Shown here: positions 26,004 to 45,399 of the stretch, piece after piece
How the letters are laid out: every line of letters starts with the position of its first letter
Numbering within the stretch: position 1 is the stretch's first letter
Assembly (NCBI GenBank): GCA_048013815.1
Contig: CM106586.1
Coordinates: forward strand, 21,762,001 to 21,826,000
Direction: 5' to 3'
Origin: Setoptus koraiensis
Taxonomy: Eukaryota > Animalia > Arthropoda
DNA: 64,000 bases
Position numbers and translations under genes: made by a program
Notes under the pieces: model-generated
The model's input: the letters and a program-made list of their open reading frames with translations, nothing else
Told to the model about the DNA's origin: nothing
Database searches by the model: none

Positions 26004-28648
26004 ATGACTTCTCCTTCAAAGAAAGAAGACAATAGCATAAAAGCGCCAGCCAGACCGGACGCCTACTCTAGACATCCGCTACGGGGTCCACTGTACCCGG
26101 GCCAAGCGGGCTCCGTTGTCAATACCGGCAGCGCGCCCTTTGTGAGGCCCATCGATGGGCCCGTTGTTAGTCCCGCCTATAGGAGTGCCAGATTAAATCA
26201 TTATTCGCCCTTTATAAATGTACATTCAAGCCGGGTAGATGGTCGCTTGCCGCCTCCCAGGCGCCCCCGGATGCCACTCAACGATCGGCTGCGGGTGGCG
26301 GCGCCCGGAAATCGTGGCGTTGCCGGTTTAAACAACATGTGGGGCGCAAATTCACAAACATTTTCGCAAGCGGCCTCGCGTGTATTAATTGTAAATCCCA
26401 TGCATATTGTCAATTTAAGCGAACACACTAAATCACGATTGATCAGGATAATAGAGGCACTAAAGCGATTTAGTGAGAAATGGTTCTCGCATGTGTTGTT
26501 ATTGTTATTTTTGGCTATTTACGCCTGTTTTGGCGCTTACATATTCACAAATTTCGAGGCGCCAAATGAACATTATGAGAAACAATTAATCATATCAATG
26601 AGAATGAAAATAGTCAACGATTCCTGGAATGCCAGAGACAGACTGAAGCCAGCTTATTTTGAGCTATTGCGAATGAGATTCGAGGAATACGAGCAGCTAC
26701 TCAACAAGGCTTGCGCAATGGGTTTCTCCAGTACGTCACTGGAAAATCAATGGACATTTTGGGGCGCCTTATTTTATTCCATGACCGTCTTCACTACAAT
26801 CGGTTATGGACACTTAACTCCAGTTACATTTGCGGGCCGCATAGGTGAGTTGACTGTCCGATCTGGTCACTGGCGACCATTGTTGTTACCTGCGATAACA
26901 CGCGATTGACTATTGTATTCAAAACCCTATAACCCTACAAAACAAATATATTCCTTATATTGGTTATATCCAATGTATTCCAACCCATTCAATGCCGGCA
27001 GCCACTATGATATACGCAATTTTTGGCATTCCGATACTGCTGATGGTTTTAGCTGATTTGGGCAAACTGTTGACGCGGGTCATCAAGTATGCCTTCAACA
27101 AGCTCAGGCTGCTCCTGTGGCGCCTGTTCAGGAGAAAGGGGGCCCAACGAACGCGCAAGATAATCTCAGACAACACAAATCAGGTGAGTCAATCAGCTAA
27201 CACCGGCTGGCATGAGCGCTAATTAGTACCAGACTAATCTAATTAGTCTAATTAGTCTAGTACTAATTAGATTAGTGAGCGTGATTCAACTAGCGTGATC
27301 AATTAGCCACTGTGACACAGACGAGCAAATGACTAAATATTGTATTGTTGACATTGTTGATTTCAATCAGTACATCGGAGTGGCCAAGGACGCCTTCGAG
27401 AAGGGATTTGCCTACATGCCGTACGTGCCTCAGGCGCTCAGGTCCAACTCGCTCAAGTCATCAGGCAACAACAACAAGCAGCAGCAGCCCCCATTCGATG
27501 CCGACAATGACACGGGCCCCAATCAGACCACCTCAGTGATAATCACCTCGTCGGCGCCCACTAAGGCCGTATCGCCGGACATCAATGGTCCGTCAACGCT
27601 GAAGAGTCAAGCCGGTGGTCAGCAGCAAGCCAACAACAAGAAACGACGCAACAGTGCCAAGTTGTCCAACTCTGGCTCCGTTAAGCAGCACAAGTCTCAA
27701 AAAGAACCGGATCAAGAGGGCTCACCATTGAGCAACGGAAATGCCAATCAAGCCGCCACAGACGAGCAACCAGACGCTGATCTGGCGCCCCCGTTGGGAT
27801 GCGTGAATCCCGTCACGGGCTTGCCGGATGCGCCTGCCTTTGAGGATATAGATGACGAATTTGATTTGCCGGTTAGTGTTGCGCTTGCCTTGTTAGTTAT
27901 GTACATGATGTTTGGTGCTGTTATATTTAGCGCCTGGGAGGGCTGGAACTTTTTCGATTCGCTATATTTTGTTTTTATATCCATGTCAACAATTGGCTTT
28001 GGCGATTTGGTGCCCCAACATCCAAAAAGAATGCTGGCAACATTCATCTATTTACTATTTGGTCTGGCGCTCACATCTATGTGCATAAACGTTGTACAAG
28101 AGAAGATACATGCCACATTCTTGAAGGCAAAAATGCAAATTGGCGAAAAAATGGGCCTCGATTTGGAACAGATAATGGCCGACGATTATTACGAGGATGA
28201 CGATGGTTATAATAATGATGACGACGACGAACACGACGCCAGTAACGACAACAACGGTCATCCAGGTAAGAACAACACCGACAATGGCCACATCACTAAA
28301 GCACCGGTGGCGCCCTCGCATTCGGAGCCCTCGTCTAACAACAACAGCTTGACGAGGGGACGCAAGAGGTCCACTAGTATAAAGGATGACAGGAATAAGA
28401 AGTCACCCAAGGATCAGGAAGCTCATGACACGTCTAGATCGTCGAGCCAAAAGAGCCTGAAGACAAACAAAGACGCTGACACCGTTAGTCCGGACAGCAA
28501 GCCGTTGGCAAACACAAACAATAAAGCCAACGAGACAGACAAGTTACAGAGGCCAATTGTAAAAAAGAAATCAACACAACCCATACTAGAGGCACCTGTG
28601 ATTAAACAATTAGACGAGCCAATGCCGCCGCCTAGGTCGCATAGATGA
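26004..28648 (+). CDS. Two-pore-domain (K2P/TWiK-family) potassium channel; exons 26004-26844, 27002-27183, 27371-28648
   Basis: Pore 1 FWGALFYSMTVFTTIGYGHLTP and pore 2 FFDSLYFVFISMSTIGFGDLVP; four TM helices. GT-AG introns keep the frame (phases 1 and 0). Confidence 0.93.
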
Positions 28649-29064
28649 GCAAGTGAGAACAAAGTCGATTGACAAGACAAGACTTACAATAGATTAATTG
28701 CGTCTTGATTATTTATAAATTAACTAGCAACAATTAAACTGGGCTCGATTGAGTCGTAGGCTAGTAATGAAAATCGAAAAATTGATTCTATATACATTAT
28801 GTAAATATTAGTTGTCGAAATCCAACACAAATCACACTCAATCAATAACAATCTGGACTTGTTGATAACAAGACGGACGCTTTTAGTTATTTATTTGCAC
28901 ATAATTAGAGCCCTAACTAACGGACAAACAACAATATGTTTCCTGTTTATATGTTCATCTTCAGTAGTAGAAATCACTATCAGTTACAGGCACAATAAAC
29001 AACATTACAATTGTCTAATTACGGCCTTCATTTTAGCCTTTATGGCATTTTTGGGTAAGAATTT

Positions 29065-30610
29065 TTATCTGGATCGTTTGAATATGATATCTTCGGTTAT
29101 ATCCTTCCTTTTGGAGCAACCGCATAGCATCATGGCGCGCCTCAATTCGTCCTCCAGTATCTTTAGAACCTTCTTCACGCCCGCTTGGCCCTGAGATTCG
29201 GGCATGAGATAATGTAAGGCAAGGTTAAAACAACAAAACAACAAGCAAACAATTAGCTTCAGTATCTCATCTTAAACACACAACCACACAGAGCCGGTGA
29301 GATAATTCATGTTTGTTAATTACCTCGCTGGCCAGGCCCCATAGTATTGGCCTACCCACAAATACCATCGTGGCGCCCAATGCGAGCGCTTTCAGAACAT
29401 CGTTTCCGGTGCGAACGCCACCATCGACAAATACCGGACAGCGTCCATTTACCACTTTAACAATGTCGGGCAGAGCCTCGATCTGGATATGTGATGGTGC
29501 AAAAATAGCAGCAATAACGGGTTATTGAATATCGGCTCACCCAGAAAAAAAAATCAGCAGCATTATCGTGGTGCCTGAATTTACTCAGACCAAACAAGGC
29601 AAGCGTTCATAGACAAGCAGAGTCAGGGGATAGTTACCGTGGATAAAGTTCCGTCCAACTGGCGGCCTCCATGATTCGAGACAAAGATTCCATCAACGCC
29701 CGCCTGAATCGCAAGCTCGGCATCTTCTCCGGTCATGATGCCTTTCACGACAACCTTGAGTCGCGTCTGTTTCTTTATCCATTCAACGTCTTCCCAGGTT
29801 AACGAGGCGTCAAATATTTTATCCGAATGATCTCGCATACTACACACATCATCGTCGTGAATATTCTCTAAAGTGAATTGGCCCAAAGTGAAATTGTTTC
29901 TCAGGTCGCGCCTACGGCATCCCAAAACGGGCGCATCACAAGTTATAACAAGCGCTCTGTAACCGTTTCTTTCTGATCGTCTAATAACGTTCATAGTGAT
30001 GTCTCGATTCTTTAATATGTAGATATTTTGCCATTTAGTACAAGCTGGCGCCTCTTTGGCAACATCCTCAAGTGATGTCGTTGAGAATAGACTCATTATC
30101 ATGACAGTATTGGCCTCATGACAGGCTCGTATGGTTGCAAGCTCTCCTTCCGGATGCGCCATCTTTTGTTGTGTTTTGTTATGTTTTGTTTTGTTTGCCG
30201 AATTAGCCCGAAGACAGCACAAGTGGCAAATCGAGTGAAATATTTGTCAAGCTAGATATTCAGAGACTCTAATATGTCCTATTTTCAAAACGAATCCATC
30301 GAAGCTAACTTACCTTCTGTAGGGCTGTGGGTGATGCACCGATTGGCATGGCGATTTTGTCGCCGAAAACCGTTATACTGGTGTCAACATCTTGGACGTT
30401 TCTCATAAGACGCGGCCTCAGTAAATACATGCTATTGAAAGAATCCTTGTTATGTTTCAGAGTTAATTCTTCGTCGGCTCCCTGATTAAAGTAATCGGCC
30501 ACTGTCTTGTTCATTTTTTCTGATGCCAATCTCTCAAAGTCATTTACACAGACCACTAGTTGACACTGGCCTGGCTCCAATTGTTGCTGGTAAATACATT
30601 CCGACTGCAT
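29065..30610 (-). CDS. HAO1: FMN-dependent (S)-2-hydroxy-acid oxidase (glycolate oxidase family); exons 30610-30314, 30162-29638, 29482-29324, 29190-29065
   Basis: Motifs [44 protein letters not shown] and [18 protein letters not shown]…GRPILWGL. All three introns are GT-AG phase 0. HAO1 vs HAO2 orthology is not resolved, and the start may lie further upstream. Confidence 0.92.
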
Positions 30611-31953
30611 TATTATTTTATGAACGATAATATTCCTATTACTTGTTAGCCTCGTTGCTTTGAAAGGGCTTCTAAATCTCTGGCAAGTTTTCGCTGTTTT
30701 TGTGAATGTGGCTAACAATCACTATTTCCTATTAGTCGCATATCTGTCCCGGTGTGAAAGAGCTCGCCATAAATTCTATATCGACACACAGTGTGTGAAC
30801 AATTGTGCAAAATTGTATTTCTCATCAACACCATTGATATATCATATCATATTGACCAAACGTATTGTCATACACAAGATGCGTGAAAAGCGTTACTAAG
30901 ACAACAATAGAGGCATAATTTCTATGAAAGAAGATAAGATGCCAGAGACAACAACAAATATCACATTATATTGCAGTCAAATCATAGAAATCTATAGTGA
31001 AACGCATTTGGTATTAATATAGTGAATGATATTTGCCAGTGTATTATTTTTTGTTGTTGTATTGCTACATAACAAAATAAAATATGTGTAGAAAAGGAGG
31101 GAGATTAAACGAGATCGCTAGTATTCGCAACGATCTCAATTGCATTACAGAGCAACTTTCCCATTTCTCGATCTTCACATTCTTTTGTGTCCAACGACGA
31201 TGATTGACAGGCTGCATCATATCAATAGAATAGCAACAGTTAAATAATAATCAAATCACATATAACAACCACTGTGTATTTGTGATATCATCATACGAGA
31301 TGAAATCAGGCGGACCTGTCGGCTTGATATATAAGCACATTAGAAATAGAGAGCAAAGAAAAAGTAAACATTTTTTCTTTATCTCTTTCATTTTATCTAG
31401 TCTATGTACATATGACTTGAATGATATTGGTGACAAGTAAATAATGATGTCGATTTCAAGTTGTTATGCATGGCAACAAACAAAGCGCCCAGACACAACA
31501 ACGGGTATTAGTGATCAGTGGCCAATTAGTGATTGCTGGTGTTCTTTACCGCTGACGTCGACACATATCCAGACGTATTTGGTAGCTATACCAACCGGTA
31601 TCAACCAAGCAATCAAGACTACTACACAATTGCGATATCATTTCTGTACGTCATTAAAACGCACGTCATTTAGGTGTATTGTGATAATCTCATCAGCAAC
31701 TATTCCCGACTCTACAAGACGTTGCCTTAGCATTACCAAGTTGGCGCTATCGTGATCATCTCTGGCAATAAAAACAACAACAACTAGCGTATCACCATGA
31801 GCATATAAACGATAATTTTCAAAAAAAAAACAGACAGACAGAAGCTGAAAGTTATTAAACAAAAAACTATTCATTCTAGTTTCGAATTACGAATATACAT
31901 CTATCCACAACCAACGAGGTCAACCATTGAATAAGATATTTAACCCGGACAAA

Positions 31954-33352
31954 ATGAGTAAGTCTACACGAGTGAGCGCGACACATGATTGAGCATCATG
32001 GGGTAAAGATTTCGTTCTTATTGCTGAAGATAAACTCATTCACTATTTTCTATTTCGAAATCACAACAGTCAAAGGAAAACTAATCGCAGAGGGCAAAAC
32101 AAAACGAATCTACCAACATGCCACGGTGGAAGACTATTGCTACATTGAAAGTAAGGACCGTATCACTGCTGGCGATGGCGCTAAAGCCGACGAAATGAAG
32201 GACAAATCCATTTACTCAACTAGAACGAATGCTGCAATATTCGAGTTTCTCAATTCCATCGGAGTGGCCACTTCTTTCGTTGGGCGTGTCGAGGGATCAG
32301 AAATAAGTTTTGTCGCGAAAAAATGCCACATGGTCCCCATTGAATGGGTCACTAGACGTATAGCGACAGGTTCATTCTTGCGACGTCATCCAAACGTCAA
32401 AGAAGGCTTCAGATTTGCACCGGTGAAACTTGAGACATTCTACAAGGACGACGCAAATCATGATCCATTTTGGTCACTGGAAAGTATTAAGGAGGCAAAA
32501 TTTCCCGATATTGATCTCAAAGAGGAGGATATTGAAAAGATGTGCATGATAACAAGACTTGTTTTTGAGGTTTTAGAACGAGCCTGGCAGAGCCTCGATC
32601 ATGCTTTAATAGATATGAAAATTGAATATGGAGTAACAAAACAAGGTGAGGTTGTTTTGTCGGATGTTATCGACAACGACTCGTGGCGCCTATGGCCTAA
32701 TGGTGACAAGCGTCTCATGCTGGACAAACAAGTGTACAGAAATTTGGAAGTAGGTGCCGATAACACCAAGGCAATGGAACAAATTAGATCAAACTTCGCT
32801 GTTGTTGCGGAGCGAACAGAAAACTTGTTTAAATCGTTAATGTCGCAATCAAATCCACCACAGTCAATCTCAGCATCACCTACCATTGCCATAATCATGG
32901 GTTCTAAGGCTGATCAAAAATTTGCTGAGCAAATTGTAAAGAATCTACGTGAAAAATGGTCAATACACGAGGTTGAACTTCATGTTAGCTCAGCGCACAA
33001 ATCAACTCATTGCACCATGGATAAGGTTGCAAAGTTAAACCAATGGCCCTCTTGCAAGTGTATAATTGCCATCGCGGGTCGCAGCAACGGATTGGGTCCA
33101 GTCGTAGCGGGAAATTCAGCCATTCCCGTAATCAATTGTCCCCCGGTATCAGATGTGGCAGTTGCAAGTGTAGATATTTGGTCCTCTATGAGATTGCCTT
33201 CCGGTTTGGGTTGCACCACAATCATTGGTGCTGACAATTGTGCCATGGCCTCTGCCCAGATAGTGGCTAACAGTAATGTTTTTGTTTGGTCTAAAGTGAG
33301 ATGTCAACAGACCATGGCTGCGATATCTTTAATGGAGTCCAATCTTGATTAA
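31954..33352 (+). CDS. PAICS: Bifunctional SAICAR synthetase/AIR carboxylase (ADE2/PAICS); coding exons 31954-31957 and 32070-33352
   Basis: EGKTK, IEWVTRRIATGSF, DMKIEYG and DVIDNDSWRLW (PurC) followed by IMGS, SAHK, AGRSNGLGPV and PVINCPP (PurE class II). ATGA|gtaagt…acaacag|TC restores M-I-K-G-K. Confidence 0.96.
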
Positions 33353-33627
33353 CATTATGAGCTGTAGAACTTTATTGAAAATTCCATAAAATACTACATC
33401 CTGAAATCAAATACGTCCGCTTCATAACTTGTAATAAAACTAAGTAGCGATTGATTGTGTCTGTTAGTTCCACGAACAGTACATCTACGATCAATTGTTA
33501 CAATAATCCTATTTACACAAGTGACTCGAAATTGGGTTAAAATGTAAGGTTGGCTCGTTTTTAATTTAGTAGTTTATTCTACCATGATTATGATCATAAT
33601 AATTATTTACTAATATTGCATAAAAAA

Positions 33628-35625
33628 CTATCTGCTTTCTGGCCAATGTCTTTTGTATTCCTCGTGTTCCGCTAAATCTTCCAAAGACTCTTTTCTATGT
33701 AGTATGCAAATAATAAACAGTATGACTATGCAAATAACAGCTAATGTTATGAATGTAGATAAAACGAGATCGCTCATTGGCGATAAAAATAGTTTATAGT
33801 CCCAGCTATTCGGATAATCCATCGGGTCTGGTATTATTATGACCTGTGCATCTGGAACTATCTGCTCAAATACTCTAGTCCTAACTTCTTTACCGCGACC
33901 ATAACCTGGAATAGTTACATTAAGTGTTTCAACAAAGTGAGGAGTTTGGCCTAAGCCAAAAATTACATAAGGTGCTTGTAAGGCAAAATGTGATGATTGG
34001 GCAAGTTGACCTGCGCACCCCTTTCGAACTTTTCCATCATTTTGGCTAAGTTCGAAGCAAATGAAAGGTCCACTTGCACTCTGACCATTGGATTCAGTAG
34101 AGGAGCATCCGTTAGTAACAAGCACTTTCATGAAGCAAGCGTCAACCATTTGCGAGTTCATCTTAGCAGTTATATACAAATCTTCCGGTTTGTTAGTGTG
34201 CTCACTACTACCAATCAACATATCGACTTTTCCGTCCTCGTTTATGTCAAATAGTATAACTAGCCTAACTTGATGATTAGGTTTAGGTGGCTCGAAGGAT
34301 ACATCATTAATCTGAAATGTTCTCGACATGGAATCAATTCCTGGTCTACTGTTCGCGGATGAATTTTCAACATTCCTCAGGAAGAGGATTTTGTTTCCTT
34401 GTGATACACTTTTAACAACCACAACAAAATCTGTATAGCCATCACCATCTAAATCAGCCGCTCTTATTGTTATAGGGAACTGATAATCCTCGCCTAGTTT
34501 TATTTCCTCTGCAATCAATTCAATATCAGTGTGATTATTGAATTTAAAAATGACCTCTGTGTGACCATTACCGGCCATGTAAATAATCTCACACATCCGA
34601 TTGCTCTTTTTACATCTTGGTATTAGATGGTCAATTTTTCCGTCCGCATTAATGTCCACCAATGCTGATTGGCCAAATTCATAATCTTTGACTTGATTTG
34701 AAAATCTATCGGTAAAGTTTTTTCTCTCCTTTGAGAACGAATCATTGAAAATTGGATTAGCCATTGCATACATGATATTTGCATCTTTGGAGCTAAATAC
34801 GAGATCGGCAGCTGCATCAGAGTTGACATCAATGAATGAATTTGAATGAGGTGCTCTGAAGAATACTGCATCAATGGACGACCATCTTGGTTCATTAATC
34901 TTCTTGAAGTCCAATGTAGTATCTTGTTTTTTAGGTGGTTGCCACACACTAACTACACCATTGAGATCAACACTCATATAATCCGTCTGTAGATCACCCT
35001 CTAAATCGAATAGTAACGGTTGAGTTAACATTTCAACGTTGATTCTAGTATATTTACATTCTGGTACATTTACGGCGGCTAATTGCATGTATTCACTTAT
35101 ATCATTGGACGAATTAGATAGTGATCCATTATTTACAATGCTACTGCTGTTTAAGGAGGGATTCTCTTCAGAATTTAAAGCTGCCGCATGAGATGAATAA
35201 GGTTCATTTATTTGTGTGACGGTATTCTTGATGGGTATAGCGAAATCTGACACAATGTTAACAAGCTCATAGATTGTTCTCCCGTCTCGCGGTGATATAA
35301 GGAGAGGCAATATGTTTGGTTGGCCATCGTTCTCTATGTCGGCCAGATAGACCTGTGCTATTTTTCTATCGCATTTGCATGAGAACTTCCAATCAAACAC
35401 AGGTTGCTTCTGTTGCTGATAATATACATTTAAATTGTATCCGTCTCCTCCAATAACAACAATATCTGTCCTCTTATCAGTGTTTAGATCACCGAAAGCA
35501 GCCGGAATACCATTGAAAGGCTTGAATTGTTCTGGTTGTTTGATTAAACATGACACTGGATGTAGATCGATCAATATGAAATTAAGTGCCACAAGAATGG
35601 CCAATTTAATGAATTCTGTAGCCAT
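33628..35625 (-). CDS. ITFG1: T-cell immunomodulatory protein / integrin-alpha FG-GAP-containing 1 (LINKIN), intronless
   Basis: Signal peptide from ATG 35625; PAAFGDLNTDKRTD, FG-GAP-like DLDGDGYTD and DINEDGKVD; QSSHFALQAPYVIFGLGQTPHFVE; IVPDAQVIIIP; C-terminal TM helix. Confidence 0.93.
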   Translation of the reverse strand: MATEFIKLAILVALNFILIDLHPVSCLIKQPEQFKPFNGIPAAFGDLNTDKRTDIVVIGGDGYNLNVYYQQQKQPVFDWKFSCKCDRKIAQVYLADIENDGQPNILPLLISPRDGRTIYELVNIVSDFAIPIKNTVTQINEPYSSHAAALNSEENPSLNSSSIVNNGSLSNSSNDISEYMQLAAVNVPECKYTRINVEMLTQPLLFDLEGDLQTDYMSVDLNGVVSVWQPPKKQDTTLDFKKINEPRWSSIDAVFFRAPHSNSFIDVNSDAAADLVFSSKDANIMYAMANPIFNDSFSKERKNFTDRFSNQVKDYEFGQSALVDINADGKIDHLIPRCKKSNRMCEIIYMAGNGHTEVIFKFNNHTDIELIAEEIKLGEDYQFPITIRAADLDGDGYTDFVVVVKSVSQGNKILFLRNVENSSANSRPGIDSMSRTFQINDVSFEPPKPNHQVRLVILFDINEDGKVDMLIGSSEHTNKPEDLYITAKMNSQMVDACFMKVLVTNGCSSTESNGQSASGPFICFELSQNDGKVRKGCAGQLAQSSHFALQAPYVIFGLGQTPHFVETLNVTIPGYGRGKEVRTRVFEQIVPDAQVIIIPDPMDYPNSWDYKLFLSPMSDLVLSTFITLAVICIVILFIICILHRKESLEDLAEHEEYKRHWPESR

Positions 35626-37279
35626 AACATTTGAAGATGTAAATAACGAATAATAATAAAATCGGTTGTTTCCCCAGCCCAAGCTGAGCGAAATAAATCT
35701 CTATTTGAGTCAGGCCTGGTGTTTATCTGTAAACGTTAACTGCAATAGCAGATAGCGCCATAATGTTACGCTATCTGCTAAATGAAACCCTGCTTGTGTG
35801 CACAGTGCACTTCTTTCGATGCACCAAGATCGGTTTACAAAAAACCCGCTAGGGGCGCTCACAGTGTTCCAAAATTTCAGATCCGAATCTACAAAGTGGC
35901 CGCTTGGAAACCGTTACACTGAAAGGTTTTACGCTGTATGATATCGCAAATCATGATGCAATCATGATGGAGCAAATCAACACTGGCGGATTTTTTTATA
36001 AATTGATCTAGATACTTTCATATAGAACACCTATTGCATTTGTTTTTGAGCTAGCGCGCCTTTGTACGTGCATTTCTGTGCTTGTGTTGCAGTGTGATGC
36101 ACTTTCATTGAAACTGTTTGTTGCGACACCCCAATGCGTAAGTAAATATACGAATCTTGCTCGATACATTTGTATTACAACTCCAAAGAGACGAAGAATC
36201 TAGATTTTTGCCCCAAGTCGAGGCTTTCGACACTAAGCTCTCGTTGATTTACCTTTCATACGATCAGAAAAGTTAGTAAGTATTGAACTCCACTTTTGAC
36301 AATGACAAACAATGGTATAAACATCACTAGCATCTGTTCAGTTTGACCGTACTACTCGCACCGCGCTCAGTTGTTGCACCTCCCTCGATCATCCAATCTG
36401 ATTGTTCTGGATTCCTTCAGAGGTATAAGAAGATGTACTTGCTCCACAAGAGAGTTCTTAGTGAAATGGACTCTCACGAGATGATTGGTGACAATTTTTG
36501 ACGGGCGGGAGTCCTCGCGCGGGTTACATCATTTCCCGTCCTCCCACTCATCTCGCGAGATATATGTATGACTCATGATATGAGGCGCTAATATTTGCAC
36601 ACTTTGTACATGTCTATGAAATGTATGAAAGCATCAATCACAGTAACATATCTATCAATAATCTTGATGTGTCGTCAGAGATTCAGGATATGTCAGTGGA
36701 TTCTCAACATGAATCTCAACCACTGGCATAGCTTATGTACAGACGACAAACGAGAGAACCGGAGTTGAGCCTCTCTCTGCCATCTCCCACCTTCCCGTCT
36801 CAGATTGGGGAGCGGGCAGCTCCTCATTCCTGATTGCAAGATGGGACCTCTCGGGGAAGAACTTTATATGCGCGAGAAGGAGATAAGTTGACGGGTGCAA
36901 TGATACAGATAAAGTTTAGATATGAATTATATCACATAAAACCCATGTGGACGTGAATTGTTTGTCTTCATTGGTCATCGAAGAGCTTCCCGTTCCGCAA
37001 AGGGGGAGGTGGGAGACCGCATCAATATTTTTTAAATCACGCGCTGTGCGTTCAAGAATCACCCTACAATGTAGAAGGAGCAAGGTTCATTGTGTTCCAA
37101 GAAGGTGTTGCAAAAAGATATGTTCACAAGCAAGAACATCTAGCGCTAACAAAGACTTTGCTATCTACATATATATATGCATACATATATAATTGCCTGT
37201 CTTTAAATCAATCAACCGATAGGAAATACCATCACGTCTGACACTTATCGGGTGACTTTTACTTTCTTGCAGTCCAAGA

Positions 37280-40200
37280 ATGCCAATCATGGACAACCCA
37301 GGTCAATCCCTGGCATCTGACAATGCCTTTCCAGTCGAGTCTCTATTGCCAAAAAAGGAAACTTGTGCTGCAAGTTTCATCAAACGAAACCCAAATTTTG
37401 ATGGTCGTGGTGTTAAAATAGCAATCTTTGACTCAGGATTAGATCCTGGTGCTCCAGGACTTTCAGTGACAACCGATGGAAAACCAAAAGTCATTCATAT
37501 GTGTGATGCCACGGGCTCAGGGGATGTAGACACCTCTGCAAAAGTATCATTAGATACCACAAACAATACCATTATCGGACTCACTGGTAGGACTCTGAAA
37601 ATCCCCGAAACTTGGCCGGCGGCCTTCGACGGCCAGTATCATATAGGTATCAAGAGTGGATATGAGTTATATCCAAGATGTGTGAAAAATCGAGTTTCAA
37701 ATTTATATACCCAACAAAAAATCAGTCCACAATTGAATAATTTACGTGCCCATGTTCTCTCGCAAAATCAGGCTTTCAAAGAGAAACAAGACAAACTGAA
37801 GGGACAAGAGAGATCGAACAGCGACAAACTCTTAGCTGATGAGTACCAAGCGAGACATAATATTATCGAGAGCATCCAAAAGATAATCAAAGATCGAGGT
37901 CCAGCATATGATGTGATATGTTACAACGACGGAACATCGTGGAAAGTATGCATAGATACCAGTGAGACTGGAGATCTAGCATCTTGCACACTCTTAGGCC
38001 CTTTCAGCGAGACACACCAATTTGCCACTTTAACTCAGACTGACCGATTGAACTACGCAGTTAATGTTCATAATGATGGAAACTTGGTTGAGATAGTGAG
38101 CATGTCAACATCCCATGGAACTCATGTGGCGAGCATAGCTGCGGCTAACTTCCCGGACGAACCTGAGAAAAATGGGGTAGCGCCTGGGGCTCAACTTATC
38201 AACATATGCATCGGTGATACTAGGCTCAATTCTGAGGAGACTGGTGTATCACTAATCAGAGCTCTAACTAAGGCCGTGGAATTAGGCGCTGATATCATAA
38301 ACATGTCCTATGGAGAGGTCAGTTCTGGAGAAGAAGGACGTATAATGGAAGTATTAGAAAAGGCTATTTGCAAATTTGGTCTCATATTTGTTGTTTCAGC
38401 AGGTAATTCTGGGCCTGCTCTCTCGACATTTGGGACACCACCTGGTAGTATTTCAGAAGCTATTGCTGTTGGGGCGTGGGTTTCACCTGACCTCATGTCG
38501 ACTGCCTACTCTATGAGAGAGAAATTACCTGCAACATACTATACATGGACATCAAGGGGTCCAACACTGGATGGGGCAGTCGGTGTTAGCATATGTGCCC
38601 CAGGCGGTGCAATCACTTCTGTTCCTAATTGGTCACTAAAAAATCATCAGTTGATGAATGGAACTTCCATGGCATCACCCAATGCTGCCGGTTGTGTTGC
38701 ACTTTTATTATCCGGATTAAAACAAAAGAAAATTCACTATTCACCTTTCAGCATCAAACGCAGTATTACAAATACAGCACGGAAACCGTCTAATTATGAT
38801 GCATTTGCTATGGGCTCAGGTGTGATATCTGTTGAAAAAGCATTCGAACACTTGGAAGCTCACGCTAATTCATCTGATTGTGATGTCCGTTTCCAAGTGA
38901 AAGTTAGTTCTCAAGGCTTAGCAGGTTTAGAGAATGGAAGAGGAATATATCTTAGAGAACCTAGACAAACCAAATTTGCGATGACACACACTGTTTCGAT
39001 CGAGCCTTCATTCTTGAACGACATTAATAGTTCACCAGTGTCAGCTGAATGTTCGGATATTTGCAACACTCAGCGCCATATCGATTTTGAAATGAACTTT
39101 TTATTAACATGCGATGCCTCTTATGTGACAGCTCCATCCTATTTAAGTCTTAGTTATACGACTAGAGTATTTGGAGTGAAAGTTGACCCTACAGGTTTAG
39201 CGCCCGGAGTCCACCACACATCTATTGTAGCGCATGATGCAGCCAACCAAGACAAAGGGGTCATGTTTGAAGTACCTATAACAATAATCAAAACTTTACA
39301 AGTGACAGATAAGATAGATTGGAAAATAGATTTCCCAGAAATGATTCTTAGGCCAGATATGGACATTCCTAGATTCTTCATCGATGTCCCTGATGGAGCT
39401 ACGTCCGCTGTTTTTGAGATAAGCCATATGGAGAACAGTGAACCAGCAACGATTATGTTACACGCAGTCCAACTAATGCCTCACAAAAGTGTGCGCGGTC
39501 ACCTATACCGCCTCAACTTTACTCTACTAGACTTGAGCACAGTAACACGTTGCTTCCCAGTTGTGGGCAATCGGACTTTGGAATGTACATTTGGAAAACT
39601 CTGGTCGTCTGTTGGACATTTGAGAGTTAAATCGTCCATTAGATTTTTCGGTTTATCACCTCTTAATTATTTAGGCGGTACACTTACGTTGAATCACGGA
39701 GAACTATTGTCTAGAATTGATGTCATTTCCCCGTTCAGACGAGATGAGATTCAACCTTCGATCTCTTTGAAACAACTAGCCACCCCACTGAAACCCTCAA
39801 GCAGCAAGATTAGTGCTTTGACCACCCGAGACAACATGATTTTTGGCGTTGAACCCTCATTCGAAATAATTCTCACATATGCCGTCAGTATTGCGACTAA
39901 GACAAGTGAAGTGACTTTTGATTGTCGCCTAACATCAGATTTTCTTTATGAATCAGAGTACGAAAGTCAATTGTGGCTTTTATTCGATTCAAATAAGAGC
40001 TTTGTTGCAGCTGGTGACTATAATCCAAGTAGATATTGCGTCGATTTGGAGAAGGGTGATTATACTCTCAAGTTTCAATTTAGACACTGTAAACATCAAA
40101 TGGTCAAACGGCTTGAGGATTTACAGATAACAATGATAAGCAAACTAAGCGGGCCGATAAACTTGGATATATACGCCAATAAATCGGACGGTGTTTATGC

Positions 40201-41440
40201 CAATGGAAAAAAGTTTAAAGACACGATGTTAGATTCCGGTACTGTTAAACCATTTTACGTGTCCTCTATGAATTCGGAGCGTCTACTCAAAGGTATTACC
40301 TTGACAACTGGTTCTTTTTTTAAGGGGACACTTGTTTTGTCCAGATCACAACTTCGTTCCCAGGCAGAAACCTTTCCAATAATATACAATATAGATGGAC
40401 CAATTGCTAAGCCTGCGCAACCTGTCGTCAATTCAAATAAGAAGCATAATCAACCAACTGCTACTAAGCAACAAGATTCAACTACGATTGAATCAACGAA
40501 TAAATTAGGTGATGATGATGGAATTAAAAGTTATCAAGAGGCTCTCTTGGACTTCAAATTGAATTGGTTGGCCAAACTTGAAGGATCTTGTGCCGATGAA
40601 GTTTTCAAGGAACTGGAATCAATTAAAGAAGAGCATCAGGCAACTAGATCACTAAACTATCTTAAGAGTATATTCAACAGCGAGCTATCCGAGATGAGCT
40701 TACATAACTTGACTAAAATAGAGGCAATATGTGATGAAATACTAGATAAAGTAAAACCAGGAGAGCTGCTCAAACAGTTAACAATCGCTTGCAAAACAGC
40801 TTCTGTAACTACCTCTCCCACTGAAAAGACTCCCAAGGCCAAAGAGCTGGACAAATTGAAAAATATAGTGGTCGAAACGCTGATAAAGAAAGGGAATGCC
40901 ATTTGTAGCTATATACTAGATCAACGTCCGTCATTAAAACCAGACACAGCCACCAGTAAAACTGTTGGTCAAGTCACACAAGGTGACGATAAATCCACAG
41001 TGAGCAGTAGCGCCAAGTATATGCATCGTGACCAGGCTGATTTACCGGACACCGTGAAAGATCAATTGCACAAGTTAGATGATCTCTACTTTGAGCTCGC
41101 TAATTGGATAGAGTTGAGCGATCCTAAGGTTATCAAATTGATAGAGACACATGCTGTTCTCAGAGGACACTACGGGCGCGCAATCGCATCATTGTTGTCT
41201 CAAAAGGAGGCAAAAGTGGATGCTGAGTTCTACAGGAATCTGATAAGTGTATGTATTCTCTCAACAAGAACCAATATGTTGTCAATCATTTTACATTCTC
41301 ATACGAGTCTGACTGATCAAATTTCTCCCATATTCCATTAACAGTACTTTAGACTTATGGACAGTCCATGGAACTGGATCAGCGACATCATTGAAAGGTC
41401 TTTCTACGTCCGATGCCCTGAATCATACAGACCCTTCTGA
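37280..41440 (+). CDS. TPP2: Tripeptidyl-peptidase II (S8 subtilase); exons 37280-41248 and 41345-41440
   Basis: FPVESLLPKKET N-terminus; catalytic triad AIFDSG, SHGTHVA, NGTSMASP. A 96-nt intron (AGT|gtatgt…ttaacag|TAC) yields the typical end …CPESYRPF*. Confidence 0.97.
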
Positions 41441-41708: not shown

Positions 41709-44174
41709 CTAATAAAGAGCTACCGACCCTCCATTGACAGGATCCGTTTGTATGGATATACAATTGGTTTTCATCTGCTGATTTTTGTTTGATTTTGGTT
41801 TGGTTTTTTTCTTTTTGCTTATAGATTTGCAAACGGTGTTAATTTGTTTCAAACTTTGCTCCGAAGAGTTGGACTTCTTTTTAATCTTCTTTTTGGTAGT
41901 GCCAACAGAGCCTGGGGCGGGTGATGAGGAGGCGACCATTAATAATGATTGTGGTCCAGGAGATAAAGTGGATGGGGTAGTCCTCGATGTAGTGCTACAT
42001 GGATGATCATTAGACATGGGTGACCCATTTGATAGGGAGGTATCAACTGATGATTCAACGAAGGCGAGAAAAGAAATTAGACACTGGAATGGTTTCTTGA
42101 GATACTAGTTCGATCATGAAAGGAATCAAGTCTACTTACTAGTTATTAGTGATACATTCGGCGATGACCTGAGTTTGGGCGAGAATTTATGGGCAATCTT
42201 GCGACACTCGTCAGTGACAAACTTTTGGAGGCATATTTTGATCCAACATGCATTACAACGACTGTCGAAGGTCATCAGACAGTCACCTAGAGATTGAGTA
42301 AGAGGAGTATCATACATACGCAGATTCAGAGTTGGTTGTTTAGAGAACATTCTATGATGCTAATGATGCAAAGTATTCATAGTTTATTCTTCTGCACCTA
42401 CCATCTTGGGCACAATAGAATTGCCGGGGCCATTGCATAAATTGCTCAAAGAATTTGGAACAAATCTGACAACTATTCTGATTGTAGGTTTTGATTATCA
42501 TTGGGGATCTCTGCTGTATACCACATATAGCACATTTTAAAAGTTCGTGACCAAACTCTTCTTGTTCTGCGATAATGATATATTGATAGCGAAATATTGA
42601 ATAAGAGTTAATTTTTAAGCCTGATTAGAGACAGAGAAATTCTTATATTTCTATTGGTTCCCAAGAATGGTTCTGAAATAAAGGTACTTACTCTTCGAAG
42701 CGATATTTGGCGGTCTCCGACTTGACACAACACTACCACCATTCGTTGTGGCAACTATGTTTTTTATATTAAGGTTATTCACAAATATTGGAGGGGATTG
42801 AAACACACTCATCCCTGTTCGCAAAGTATTAGATCTTTTGCTTGTTTGTTTCACTAAGTCTAATGGTTGACTATCATTATTCAAGCGGGAGTTGGGGTCA
42901 TTATCTAAATCATCAAACATCAGAGGTCTTTTTAGTATCCTTCTAATAGTCTTCTCACTAAGCTTCAATCGTGGTCTCTTCAAGTCGTTCATGAAAGATG
43001 GGGGTGATGGTGTAGGTGATGGGGGAGTTGGTGACATAGATTCTATAGATGATATTCTACTGCTAGTACGTGATGAATCAGAATCTGATGTCCATGAATC
43101 ATTAGAATCAGATTCAGTTGAGGTAAGATCTGATGAGAATATTTTGCCTTCAGATGACAATTCAGAACTAGTTCTACCATCTCCGTCTGATGTTTTACTG
43201 TCAGATTTGTGTTCAGCTTCAGAGACGTTACAATCAGCTAAGTTGATGATTGAATAAGAGAGATAACTAAGGTTAAACACGTGATCCGTAAGAGGGTTAG
43301 GATACTTGAGACATCTGAATAGTATTTTGTTTTACTTACGTGATGTAGTTGCAGTTAAAGCTTTTGCGCAAGATCTTTCATTATCACTCAAATCTTCAAT
43401 CGTTGTATCTTGGATTTTAATACCATTGGGCTTATTGCAGCTTCCGTTAGTCAACGAGGATATTTTTGGCAATATGTTGACGAACCGATCATTTATGCAG
43501 TGTTCAAGGTCATCTTGAGTGTTGCATGATGCATCCTTGTGATTTAATTCAATAGAAACTTTGTGTGAATCATCTCTCAGTGGAGATATATCACCGTTTT
43601 GTTTTTTTGCATTATCTATTCTGCTATCATCAATGATGCTAGGTAGATCCTGAACTTCTCTTTTGGTTTTCTCACTTATTCCATTTCTTGAACATGGCGA
43701 TCGTAATACTCTATCATTGGGTTTGGATTTTATTAAATTATGAGGAATATCAATGACAGGCTTGAGACTTGCTTTTGTGGCAACCTTGAGTGTTCTAGGT
43801 TGTTTGGGGGGTTTAGCCAGATCAAGAACACCATTGTTATGACCATTAACCTGCAATGGAGACTTAGAAACTATTTCCAAATCTTTGACTTCTTCCTCCT
43901 TACTAGATGGTGAAATAGTTTTCGCTTTTCTAAGAACATTAGCTCTAGCTGCAGTTGATTGACGAGTTGAAGATCTAGATTGAGTCACAATTTTGTTTGT
44001 CTGTAGCCTTTGATCTTTTTCTTTCTCAGAAATAGCTGTTCGGGCACAATCAGATTTTGCTGTAGCGTTGTTGTCAACATCTTGTTGGTTGCTTTCATTA
44101 ATTTTGATAGTAAGCAGCTGAAGGCACATTTTCAATCTGTTATCTGTTGCCGATGATGTGAGTCTTTGTAGACT
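41709..44174 (-). CDS. Multi-exon nuclear protein with Ser-rich regions and an atypical nuclear-receptor-type C4 zinc finger (5' end unresolved); exons 44174-43340, 43237-42692, 42566-42402, 42286-42140, 42046-41709
   Basis: Four GT-AG phase-1 introns join the ORF-track fragments in frame. The spliced product contains KCAIC-x17-CQICSKFF…YCAQDGDCLMTFDSRCNACWIKIC, a QPLDLV motif and a Lys-rich NLS-like tail. Confidence 0.8.
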
Positions 44175-44258
44175 CTGATAGAGTTAGATAGAAGAGTAAG
44201 ATAGGTGTATATGTTAGTAAAGTTACGGAAAATGGATACGACTACCATGATAGTTGTC

Positions 44259-44727
44259 TTATAGAGATTGTTTGCAATAGAAGAGAAATAAAAATATTTC
44301 TGCCTCAAGAGCAGCTAGAGCATACTGAGATAGGAGTCTACGGTCTTTCGCCGAAACATTGATTGAATTCGTCTGTTTAAACGAAGCTTGCGGTGCTATT
44401 ACTGAGGCGGTAGCACGCAGCAAAATGTCTCCTGATGTCAAAATTTAAAATAAAAACTGCACTAAAAAAATTATTATAAAATATCTTGCTTGAATATGGC
44501 GAGATGCTCACCCTAATGACGTTGTTGCTAGGCCTATTGTTTTCAGCAAGAGATTTGTACAATTCCTTGTGATTTTTGATGGTGGCTAGGCATTCTAAGC
44601 ATTCACCGTGATGTCCGATAATCTCTGAATTGATCTTGTCGAGATTATTGAAAACTGGACATCCATGCGCCTTGCCCCTGTATCTATGTGTTATGGGAGA
44701 TCTGTAGGCGTGACGTGGTCGAAACAT
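44259..44727 (-). CDS. Probable upstream coding exon(s) of the zinc-finger gene, or a separate small gene (MFRPRHAYRSPITHRYRGKAHGCPVFNNL…)
   Basis: ATG at 44727, protein-like frame ending at a donor AGG|gtgagc. Downstream acceptor catcag. No unambiguous in-frame join to the 44174 exon was found. Confidence 0.4.
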
Positions 44728-45399
44728 GATAAACACTCTAAGCAAAGGTTAGATGTTCCTGTTTACATGTCGATCAAATAAGATACAATACAGCTTCTTC
44801 TTGTAATGATTTCATTGAGAGATAAATATTGGTTGTCAACCATATTAGATCGTAGCGTAGAAGACATAATTAAGGAAAATGTGTTTGCAAGTGTTGTTGT
44901 TGTTGTTGACGTTTTTTGCATTTGAAGTATGCATTGAGATTTTGCTAATCAGATGAATGGTGATAGATGAAATTTGTCTTGATGGGTTTGCGTTTCAATT
45001 AGAATAATATGACTGATTTAATGTGTGCCCAGATGAATCCCATTTCGATTAATACCTTTAATAATAAAAAACAGCACCGATCATTTGTTCAAATGAGTGT
45101 ATGTATGCATGTGTGTGTGTCACCGTGTGTATTGTACGCGCGTACATTCGTCTTGATAATTGGTTTTAAAATTTATCTCTCCAGTAATAGTATCATGTAG
45201 TTATGTAATAAATAATGATATTGATGCGTGCGTTGATTTAAATATTAAATGCTGATACTGCCGTTGATATAATGATAAATCAATAATAATAATTATTAAA
45301 ATGATAATAGTAATAATAGTAATAACAATAATAATCGTAATAATAATTTATCGAAGATAGCGTCAGCTTGAATGGTTTTGCAGCTCATGCATGTATCAT

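What the first reader, a model, noticed from the sequence alone, without database searches (positions are those of the whole stretch)
42231..42534. Hidden, intron-split atypical nuclear-receptor-type zinc finger with no ligand-binding domain
Splicing gives C-x2-C-x17-C-x2-C-x15-C-x5-C-x7-C-x2-C-x4-C, against the canonical NR pattern C-x2-C-x13-C-x2-C-x15-C-x5-C-x9-C-x2-C-x4-C. The P-box is non-canonical (CQICSKFF vs CEGCKGFF), and the RCNACWIKIC end resembles the NR-like finger of Drosophila Trithorax (RCTACWLKKC). The protein has no LBD, PHD or SET domain, places the finger near the C-terminus and carries a CtBP-like QPLDLV motif. It may be a little-known stand-alone transcription or chromatin regulator with novel DNA specificity. 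The first finger is absent from the ORF track.
Basis: partly seen in the sequence, partly recalled or inferred. Interest (0 to 1): 0.7.

Follow-up and report, generated by a model that had tools for sequence, protein, structure and literature searches.

The report
Orphan receptor-like zinc finger gene
This is a real six-exon gene of a compact, intron-poor animal genome (a gall-type mite, according to earlier notes of this scan) whose protein ends in a two-zinc module descended from the DNA-binding domain of hormone receptors, with altered loop lengths, no hormone-binding part and a conservation pattern suggesting it no longer reads DNA the way receptors do.

Summary
GT-AG splicing at 42692/42566 and 42402/42286 joins open frames and gives C-x2-C-x17-C-x2-C-x15-C-x5-C-x7-C-x2-C-x4-C.

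The junctions are supported instead by 41 homologous proteins. On the four contigs I fetched, these are single uninterrupted ORFs that read collinearly through the junctions. One distant relative keeps the intra-finger intron at the same codon and phase.

A profile of the family's finger matches nuclear-receptor DBDs in the PDB across both fingers (VDR 2.8e-8; all 60 listed rows are receptors). No ligand-binding domain is present.

There are two more 5' exons, which encode a conserved block of about 100 aa of unknown fold, and probably one more 3' exon. The total is 748 codons.

The CtBP-like motif is not conserved. The positions that read DNA bases in receptors are among the most variable in the family, while finger 2 is nearly invariant. 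Canonical half-site recognition is therefore unlikely.

No member has an informative name, and none comes from NCBI or UniProt. I file this as a new variant of a known kind: an unannotated family with an NR-derived finger. The scan's notes showed no earlier finding of it on other DNA.

The parts
44512..44727 (-). Exon 1 (ATG at 44727; 72 codons, phase 0): first part of the conserved N-terminal block (MFRPRHAY...NNVIR)
   Evidence: 69% identical to P0017 residues 1-72. The tblastn hit boundaries are exactly 44727-44512 (E 7e-30). Alignment A4. Donor AGG|GTGAGC.
44175..44511 (-). Intron 1 (337 nt, GT...AG)
   Evidence: Intronless homologues read NNVIK-SLQRL without interruption across this point. 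AG-free zone of 65 nt with two CTAAC motifs.
43340..44174 (-). Exon 2: SLQRL...NRLKxCLQ(F/L)L..K(V/I)NE motif, followed by a variable polar region rich in Ser, Lys, Asn and Thr
   Evidence: E 3e-10 to P0017 residues 73-157. Donor C|GTAAGT, phase 1.
43238..43339 (-). Intron 2 (102 nt, GT...AG)
   Evidence: The frames join (C+CT = Pro). Retention would give a stop.
42692..43237 (-).
   Evidence: E 1e-11 to P0005 residues 233-334. The basic motif and the FQ(A/S)PP motif are conserved in most of the family. QPLDLV is not.
42567..42691 (-).
   Evidence: AG-free zone of 52 nt. Phase 1 on both sides.
42402..42566 (-). Exon 4: finger 1 (C-x2-C-x17-C-x2-C), the helix-1 equivalent with its non-canonical P-box, the linker, and the first Cys of finger 2
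   Evidence: Alone it gives Pfam zf-C4 at E 0.023, profile positions 2-41 of 70. All 30 Atlas feature hits are zf-C4. It is 46-58% identical to P0001-P0010.
42287..42401 (-).
   Evidence: All 41 homologues read ...C(A)QDG(D/N)CLMTFDSRC... without an indel. The distant relative on L005 has an intron at the same codon and phase.
42140..42286 (-). Exon 5: rest of finger 2 (C-x7-C-x2-C-x4-C) and the conserved tail ...KFSPKLRSSPNVSLIT
   Evidence: 78% identical to P0005 residues 404-452, E 4e-25. tblastn boundaries 42287-42141.
42047..42139 (-). Probable intron 5 (93 nt, GTAAGT...TCAG).
   Evidence: After splicing, the window reads SLIT-IDTS-LS..., matching the homologues' SLITIDTS(LSR). L005 has a phase-1 GT at the same place, after ...ALIT. 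This is inferred and has no RNA support.
41709..42046 (-). Probable exon 6: IDTS followed by an extension of about 107 aa with Lys-rich stretches, which the homologues lack. Stop codon at 41711-41709.
   Evidence: Open frame. No Pfam family. Homologues end 3-4 residues after IDTS.
42231..42534 (-).

Best explanation
Shown:
- The finding is part of an intact six-exon, 748-codon gene on the minus strand (44727-41709). It belongs to an unannotated but strongly conserved protein family.
- The family architecture has three parts. First comes an N-terminal block of about 100 aa, helical and of unknown fold. Next is a long Ser/Thr/Asn-rich, probably disordered middle carrying a basic PRLKLSExKIRKIKKRP motif and an FQAPPxFVNxLK motif. 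Last is a C-terminal two-zinc module followed by a conserved tail (KYSPKLLSSPNVSLITIDTS).
- The zinc module is homologous to the nuclear-receptor DNA-binding domain. It keeps all eight zinc-ligand Cys, the ninth Cys (not a zinc ligand in receptors, by textbook knowledge), CxxCG, YG, the FF pair and C-x-A-C-x-[IL]-K-x-C-L. Relative to receptors it has 4 extra residues in the finger-1 loop and 2 fewer in the finger-2 loop. It has no ligand-binding domain.

Inferred mechanism:
- The protein is nuclear, given its basic NLS-like motif.
- It uses the receptor-derived module as a rigid zinc scaffold whose working surface is finger 2, the helix after it and the tail. It does not use the helix-1 'reading head'.
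- It therefore probably does not recognise AGGTCA/AGAACA-type half-sites as receptors do. It more likely docks onto a partner (a protein, or nucleic acid in a non-canonical way), while the disordered middle and the N-terminal block carry the regulatory output.
For: Gene and junctions:
- All introns have canonical GT-AG ends, and the six exons give an open 748-codon CDS.
- Every exon matches the homologues in order.
- On the four fetched contigs, which are gene-dense and genomic, the homologues are single ORFs that read through the junctions.
- L005 shares the intron position and phase.

Homology to the NR DBD:
- Profile A3 against the PDB gave 84 distinct sequences at E<=1, and all 60 listed rows are NR DBDs. 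The best are VDR 2.8e-8, TR4 1e-7, RXR 1.1e-7 and COUP-TF1 3.8e-7, spanning profile positions 8-73.
- Pfam zf-C4 scores 16.5-28.4 bits over profile positions 3-65 of 70.
- The Atlas feature search returned 30 of 30 zf-C4 clusters.
- The AF2 model (pLDDT 79) has NR DBDs as its top structural neighbours, but only weakly: Z 3.1-3.9 and TM about 0.42.

No LBD: there is no other Pfam domain in the homologues or in the window's exons. Only about 370 nt separate the stop codon from the convergent TPPII gene.

Working surface: in 39 distinct domains, the P-box and base-contact equivalents (positions 23, 26, 27, 30, 31) have 1.5-2.5 bits of entropy, among the highest in the domain. Finger 2 (positions 41-68) averages 0.31 bits, with 18 invariant non-Cys positions. 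Mean net charge is only +3.6.
Against:
- The window's own joined domain was never scored or folded. Its assignment rests on exon-wise matches and on the homologues.
- Structural matches are weak (Z<4), and the model draws finger 2's C-terminal part as strand, not the helix seen in receptors.
- Positions 27, 34 and 35 are mostly Lys/Arg, the domain is still net basic, and the tail has Lys/Arg. DNA binding of some kind is therefore not excluded.
- Variable helix-1 positions could also reflect lineage-specific retargeting and not loss of DNA reading.
- The nuclear location, the partner and the function are all untested.
Confidence: 0.55

Rival explanations
1. One reading: a stand-alone, sequence-specific transcription factor. 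The module binds DNA through helix 1 as receptors do, but with a new specificity set by its unusual P-box.
For: The module is homologous to the NR DBD. The FF pair and the helix-1 core are conserved. The domain is net positive, and positions 27, 34 and 35 are mostly basic. A basic NLS-like motif lies upstream. DBD-only receptors that bind DNA exist (knirps, ODR-7; my own knowledge).
Against: The exposed helix-1 positions that equal the receptor's base-contacting Glu, Lys, Lys and Arg are not conserved. They are among the most variable columns even between orthologues that are 50-86% identical in the domain. Finger 2 is almost invariant. The Arg after the last CxxC, which contacts phosphate in receptors (my own knowledge), is an invariant Trp here.
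Confidence: 0.27
2. A degenerate orthologue of a canonical nuclear receptor (for example one of HNF4, HR39, HR78 or HR83, reported missing from an eriophyoid genome) that lost its LBD during genome streamlining, like E75, DSF, HR4, HR38, HR51 and SVP in Aculops lycopersici.
For: LBD loss is documented in an eriophyoid mite (PMC7738191). The best PDB matches include the NR2-type DBDs TR4, RXR and COUP-TF.
Against: The finger sits at the C-terminus behind a conserved non-receptor N-terminal block. The loop lengths differ from receptors in both fingers in all 41 members. A much more distant relative that still has introns (L005) already has the x17 loop and the same tail, so the family predates the streamlined, intronless lineage. 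No canonical receptor appears among the sequence hits at E<0.01.
Confidence: 0.08
3. A relative of the nuclear-receptor-type finger of Trithorax, that is, a chromatin-complex module and not a transcription-factor DBD.
For: The literature confirms that Trx carries a variant of the NR-type DBD (cited title seen).
Against: No SET, PHD or FYR domain is present. No Trx-like protein appeared in any search, although the length limits of the word search would hide a protein of about 3700 aa. The resemblance was not tested directly.
Confidence: 0.05
4. Not a functional gene: a chance Cys pattern or a decaying pseudogene.
For: No RNA evidence was obtained.
Against: All six exons are open. 41 homologues have invariant Cys and a near-invariant finger 2. 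The window's copy keeps every invariant residue of the domain; among the conserved columns it differs only at two near-invariant ones (Leu33 to Met, Gly18 to Asn).
Confidence: 0.01

Closest known systems
Nuclear receptor DNA-binding domain (Pfam PF00105 zf-C4; e.g. TR4/NR2C2, RXR, VDR, COUP-TF DBDs)
   Same: Two C4 zinc modules in the same order. It shares CxxCG, the YG before Cys3, the FF after Cys4, the 15-residue linker, C-x5-C, the R-C-x-A/x-C-x-[LI]-K-x-C-L ending and the ninth Cys. Profile-to-sequence E is 2.8e-8 to 1e-6 over both fingers.
   Different: The finger-1 loop is 17 residues, not 13, and the finger-2 loop is 7 (10 in L005), not 9. The P-box Glu-Gly and the base-contacting Lys, Lys and Arg are absent and variable. 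The Arg after the last CxxC is replaced by an invariant Trp. The module lies at the C-terminus. There is no LBD. Pfam scores straddle the gathering cutoff.
DBD-only nuclear receptors (NR0A: Drosophila knirps/knrl/eagle; C. elegans ODR-7)
   Same: A receptor-type finger without an LBD.
   Different: By my own knowledge, not tested here: those have canonical spacing and P-box-type helices, an N-terminal DBD (knirps group) and a kni-box. This family has none of these and carries its own N-terminal block.
LBD-less receptors of the eriophyoid mite Aculops lycopersici (E75, DSF, HR4, HR38, HR51, SVP; PMC7738191)
   Same: If the earlier scan notes are right, the same kind of organism. All are receptor-type DBDs without an LBD.
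   Different: Those are recognisable orthologues of named receptors, found by BLAST at E<1e-10. This family is not in that inventory (no match in the supplements), and it matches no canonical receptor at E<0.01 in the sequence searches.
Nuclear-receptor-type finger of Drosophila Trithorax
   Same: A receptor-like finger in a protein that is not a receptor.
   Different: No SET, PHD or FYR context. The similarity was not testable with the sequences available.
GATA-type zinc finger
   Same: Finger 1 has the C-x2-C-x17-C-x2-C spacing.
   Different: No GATA hit in Pfam or in the PDB profile search. GATA1 scores only Z 2.6, below the receptors.

Membership tests
Nuclear receptor DBD (PF00105 zf-C4) | Eight Cys in two C4 modules, plus the conserved ninth Cys | tested here: met
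   All nine Cys are present in the window and invariant in 39 distinct family domains.
Nuclear receptor DBD (PF00105 zf-C4) | Canonical spacing C-x2-C-x13-C-x2-C-x15-C-x5-C-x9-C-x2-C | tested here: not met
   17 in place of 13 and 7 in place of 9, in the window and in all 41 homologues. L005 has 17 and 10.
Nuclear receptor DBD (PF00105 zf-C4) | Score at or above Pfam's gathering cutoff (21.1 bits) | tested here: inconclusive
Homologues score 16.5-28.4 bits. Four of ten pass, and so does a P0017 fragment at 23.9. The window's exon 4 alone scores 15.6 bits.
Nuclear receptor DBD (PF00105 zf-C4) | Significant sequence homology to solved receptor DBDs over both fingers | tested here: met
   Family profile against the PDB: 84 distinct sequences at E<=1, all 60 listed are receptor DBDs, best 2.8e-8.
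Nuclear receptor DBD (PF00105 zf-C4) | P-box (C-E/D-G-C-K-G/A/S) and the basic base-contact residues of helix 1 | tested here: not met
   The window has C-Q-I-C-S-K-F-F-E-Q. In the family these columns have 1.5-2.5 bits of entropy and no conserved Glu, Lys or Arg (position mapping from the TR4 alignment).
Nuclear receptor DBD (PF00105 zf-C4) | Receptor DBD fold | tested here: inconclusive
   The AF2 model of homologue P0002:415-495 has pLDDT 79. NR DBDs take ranks 1-6 of 48,161 chains, but at Z 3.1-3.9. Foldseek gives TM about 0.42 and E about 1.
Nuclear receptor superfamily (canonical) | Ligand-binding domain (PF00104) C-terminal to the DBD | tested here: not met
   No such hit in any exon or homologue. 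Homologues end 30-47 aa after the ninth Cys. There is no room downstream in the window.
NR0A knirps group | N-terminal canonical DBD followed by a kni-box | tested here: not met
   The module is C-terminal with non-canonical spacing. The kni-box was not compared, as no reference sequence was at hand.
Trithorax-type NR-like finger | Sequence similarity to the Trx finger; SET/PHD/FYR context | not testable with these tools
   No Trx sequence was available by reference. SET, PHD and FYR are absent.
CtBP-recruiting repressors | Conserved PxDLS-type motif | tested here: not met
   The window's QPLDLV has no counterpart in the aligned homologues. A P.DL[SVT] pattern occurs in only 2 of 41, at other places.

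The most novel reading that the evidence does not exclude
A receptor DNA-binding domain has been turned into a non-DNA-reading docking module. Its invariant finger 2, the counterpart of the receptor dimerisation (D-box) surface, would pair with the DBDs of true receptors or with another partner. The protein would then act as a lineage-specific modulator of receptor signalling, in animals that have lost many receptors and ligand-binding domains.
Probability: 0.15. Interest if true: 0.7.

Novelty: new variant of a known kind. Interest (0 to 1): 0.5.

Why it matters
Receptor-type zinc fingers outside true nuclear receptors are very rare; by my own knowledge, Trithorax is the usual textbook example. 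Here a whole conserved family carries such a finger in a new architecture: a new N-terminal block, a C-terminal finger, changed loop lengths and lost reading-head residues.

The family was missed by the published receptor inventory of a gall-type mite, and it has no named member in the collections searched.

It offers a natural experiment on what a receptor DBD scaffold can do once it is freed from hormone and half-site recognition. It also shows stepwise intron loss: five introns in the window, and none in the homologues whose ORFs span the whole protein.

Tried and rejected
- All such calls were exon by exon and by reference. Exons were joined only inside local scripts, to count Cys spacing and check for internal stops. 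The fold model is of homologue P0002:415-495, not of the window's protein.
- **Exon 5 alone against Pfam:** only a spurious RING-like hit (E 0.003, below cutoff).
- **N-terminal block:** no Pfam family (best E 0.018, below cutoff), no Atlas feature hit, and AF2 pLDDT 57. I did not run a fold search on it because the model is too poor.
- **Three word-index searches** (full-length profile, P0017 finger region, P0015 finger region) returned only the same closed family, with no named relatives.
- **Cluster look-up:** no accessions or informative names.
- **Placing the window's genome:** the exact look-up of the window's PAICS found nothing on record.
- **Paper searches:** searches for the sample accessions found nothing. 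The A. lycopersici supplements held no zf-C4, PF00105 or knirps text.
- **NR intron positions:** a paper confirmed that DBD intron positions are group-specific but gave no coordinates in its text, so I could not test whether the family's intron coincides with a receptor intron.
- **Rejected readings:** GATA and RING (no supporting hits), the CtBP motif (not conserved), and pseudogene (all exons open and conserved).
Full report
**1. Observation**

I read 41800-43200 on the minus strand.

The first is a|GTAAGT...GCAG|aa (intron 42691-42567, 125 nt). The second is g|GTAGGT...CTAG|gt (intron 42401-42287, 115 nt). Both exon ends are phase 1, so the frames join. A script reading the window file counted Cys spacings of 2/17/2/15/5/7/2/4.

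**2. RNA evidence**

I report the junctions as supported by homology, not by transcripts.

**3. Exon-wise searches**

Every call used single exons by reference.

- Exon 4 (54 aa) alone gives Pfam zf-C4 at E 0.023, 15.6 bits, profile positions 2-41 of 70, which is below the 21.1-bit cutoff.
- It also gives about fifteen receptor DBDs at E about 1-10 in the PDB.
- In the ESM Atlas feature search, all 30 hits are zf-C4 clusters, the top one at 0.91 with 182 shared features.

**4. A family**

A phmmer search of exon 4 against 1.84 billion representatives found 16 proteins at E<=0.001. Thirteen of them (P0001-P0010, P0012, P0013, P0015; 39-58% identity, E 6e-12 to 5e-4) carry the match about 100 residues from their C-terminus. 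One more is a fragment of a distant relative (P0014), and two (P0011, P0016) are unrelated repeat proteins. With the later searches, the family has 41 recovered members.

The four contigs I fetched are genomic and gene-dense, with mostly intronless metazoan genes such as DC-STAMP, tropomodulin, polyubiquitin, SDA1 and ATG14. In them, the called ORF that includes the finger is one uninterrupted reading frame.

When the window's exons are aligned to these proteins, exon 4 plus the split Gly codon plus exon 5 is collinear with '...YCAQDG-DCLMTFDSRC...' and shows no indel. Exon 5 is 78% identical to P0005 (E 4e-25). This is independent support for junction 42402/42286. Junction 42692/42566 lies in a variable stretch. 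It is supported by the canonical sites, matching phase and order of matches, but less sharply.

**5.

The homologues begin with a conserved block, MF(R/K)PRHAY...GCPVFNN...ECLECLA...NNVIK-SLQRLSSSASNNRLKTCLQFLIIKVNEKS. The window encodes it in two further exons:

- Exon 1 is 44727-44512. The tblastn hit has exactly those limits, at 69% identity and E 7e-30.
- Exon 2 starts at 44174. Across the junction it is collinear with the intronless 'NNVIK-SLQRL'.

At the 3' end, most homologues continue ...SPNVSLIT-IDTS and stop 3-4 residues later (the three most divergent, P0010, P0012 and P0015, end differently). The window reads SLIT, then Ser-Lys-stop in frame. A GTAAGT donor one base after the ACT codon and an acceptor at 42047 restore 'IDTS-LS'.

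The full model is six exons: 44727-44512, 44174-43340, 43237-42692, 42566-42402, 42286-42140 and 42046-41709. The five GT-AG introns are 337, 102, 125, 115 and 93 nt. The CDS has 748 codons with no internal stop, comparable with P0017 (742 aa) and P0042 (748 aa).

Each intron has an AG-free zone of 27-65 nt before its acceptor, and four of five have a CTAAC-like motif near it. Earlier notes of this scan describe this layout for the genome, and I checked it only on these five introns. The last exon adds about 107 residues with Lys-rich stretches that no homologue has. Whether it is always included is unknown.

**6. What the module is**

I aligned the finger region of 12 members (A3). A profile of that alignment against all PDB sequences found 84 distinct sequences at E<=1. 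All 60 listed are nuclear-receptor DBDs: VDR 2.8e-8, TR4 1e-7, RXR-alpha 1.1e-7, COUP-TF1 3.8e-7, then GCNF, HNF4, RAR, USP, GR, ERR and NGFI-B. The matches span both fingers (profile positions 8-73).

Pfam zf-C4 matches the full homologues over profile positions 3-65 of 70 at 16.5-28.4 bits. Four of ten pass the cutoff, one has no hit, and a P0017 fragment scores 23.9.

The printed TR4 alignment places the differences as follows:

- four extra residues in the finger-1 loop, between CG-x-K-x and the YG;
- two fewer residues in the finger-2 loop.

CxxCG, YG, the FF pair, R-C-x-x-C, [IL]-K-x-C-L and the ninth Cys all line up. By textbook knowledge the ninth Cys is not a zinc ligand in receptors, so its retention speaks for common descent and not for a convergent zinc motif.

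An AlphaFold model of homologue P0002:415-495 (pLDDT 79, pTM 0.65) has receptor DBDs as its best structural neighbours. They take Foldseek's top five places and VIA-align ranks 1-6 of 48,161 chains. The scores are weak, though (TM about 0.42; Z 3.1-3.9), and FYVE and RING fingers follow closely. I take the fold evidence as consistent but not decisive. The sequence-profile evidence carries the claim.

**7. No ligand-binding domain, no CtBP motif, Trithorax untested**

- No exon and no homologue has any other Pfam domain. Homologues end 30-47 residues after the ninth Cys.
- In the window, only about 370 nt separate the stop from the end of the convergent, intronless tripeptidyl-peptidase II gene.
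A P.DL[SVT] pattern occurs in only 2 of 41 members, at other positions. It is probably chance.
- The claimed likeness to the Trithorax finger rests on a recalled sequence. The literature confirms that such a variant finger was described in Trx (cited title), but I had no Trx sequence by reference and could not test it.

**8. Constraint pattern**

I measured per-column entropy in 39 distinct domains.

- The columns that correspond to the receptor P-box and base-contacting residues (positions 23, 26, 27, 30, 31 counted from the first Cys) have 1.5-2.5 bits. They are among the most variable in the domain.
- The core-facing F29, F32 and L33 are fixed or nearly so.
- Finger 2 with its following helix (positions 41-68) averages 0.31 bits. 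D44, G45, M49, D52, R54, A57, W59, K61, L64 and K66 are invariant.
- The Arg after the last CxxC in the aligned receptors VDR and TR4 is an invariant Trp here. By my own knowledge that Arg contacts phosphate in receptors.
- Mean net charge is +3.6. Receptor DBDs are, by my own knowledge, considerably more basic.

The window's copy keeps every invariant residue of the domain. Among the conserved columns it differs only at two near-invariant ones: Leu33 to Met and Gly18 to Asn.

For orthologous DNA-reading domains one expects the reverse pattern. I therefore infer that the functional surface is finger 2 plus the tail, and that classical half-site reading has been given up. This is an inference from conservation, not a measurement. 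Some form of DNA binding is not excluded.

**9. Distribution and intron history**

Three word-index searches (a full-length profile, then the finger and tail regions of P0017 and of P0015) returned only the same closed set. Nothing scored between E 1e-87 and 1e-3 in the first search. There were no NCBI or UniProt sources, and the only name was 'hypothetical protein'.

One distant relative lies on ENA contig L005. It has finger 1 with the same x17 loop, an intron of about 60 nt at the same codon and phase (AGC G|gtaatc...ctcag|GC GAC TGT), a finger-2 loop of 10 residues, the same tail (KYSPKL...VALIT) and a phase-1 GT at the same place after '...LIT'. So both introns are probably ancestral, and the intronless genes are the derived state. 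Many homologue ORFs start just upstream of 'SLQRL', which suggests that intron 1 is still present in those species.

Earlier notes of this scan call the genome an eriophyoid (gall-type) mite. That fits the very compact, intron-poor layout I saw, but I did not verify the identity.

The published receptor inventory of the eriophyoid Aculops lycopersici lists eight canonical and six LBD-less receptors, found by BLAST at E<1e-10 with spider-mite receptor queries (PMC7738191). This family is not among them and would not pass that filter.

**10. Verdict**

The gene model needed extension at both ends. The CtBP motif falls. The proposed 'novel DNA specificity' is less likely than a non-canonical use of the scaffold.

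The finding is a new variant of a known kind: an unannotated, conserved family with a receptor-derived finger in a new architecture. Function is unknown. My committed reading is a nuclear regulator that uses finger 2 and the tail as a docking surface (confidence about 0.55 for the whole statement, and about 0.9 for the gene and homology part alone).

Noticed in passing
window 37280-41341 (+): An intronless 1353-aa tripeptidyl-peptidase II gene (Peptidase_S8, the TPPII domains and TPPII_C). It is convergent with the finger gene, with only about 370 nt between the two stop codons.
   Followed up: partly
window 21315-35682: A run of long single-exon metazoan ORFs: a TPR protein (613 aa), two adjacent K2P-type ion-channel ORFs (26004-26909 and 27329-28648), bifunctional PAICS (31985-33352) and ITFG1 (33628-35682, minus strand). 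Against this intron-poor background, the finger gene's five introns stand out.
   Followed up: partly
family members P0007, P0020, P0021, P0028, P0029, P0039 versus P0001, P0002, P0017, P0019, P0023, P0042, P0044: Intron presence varies across the family. Several ORFs begin just upstream of 'SLQRL', which implies a retained intron 1. Others read NNVIK-SLQRL continuously. The intra-finger intron is absent from all 41 but kept in the window and in L005.
   Followed up: partly
window 41709-42046 (-): The window's protein probably carries an extra C-terminal extension of about 107 aa with Lys-rich stretches (KKKIKKK, KKKKTKPK) after the IDTS motif. The homologues with this motif end 3-4 residues after it.
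   Followed up: no
P0004 (229 aa) and P0045 (237 aa): Two short family members join the first 20-30 N-terminal residues (MFRPRHAY...RYRGK) almost directly to the basic motif and the finger. They lack the helical block and the long middle. They could be a short paralogue or isoform, or an artefact of ORF calling.
   Followed up: no
L005 2071-2650 (+): A distant relative of the family on a metagenome scaffold next to an Ig/DSCAM-like gene. It has a finger-2 loop of 10 residues. No N-terminal block was detectable within the 2 kb upstream. The organism is unknown.
   Followed up: partly
window 45250-45345 (-): A run of ATT/TTA-type simple repeats about 550 nt upstream of the gene's start codon.
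   Followed up: no
family tail ...SPNVSLITIDTS: The conserved tail resembles a SUMO-interaction-type hydrophobic core (L-I-T-I followed by D-T-S). It is preceded by Ser-Pro sites. This is a resemblance from memory only.
   Followed up: no
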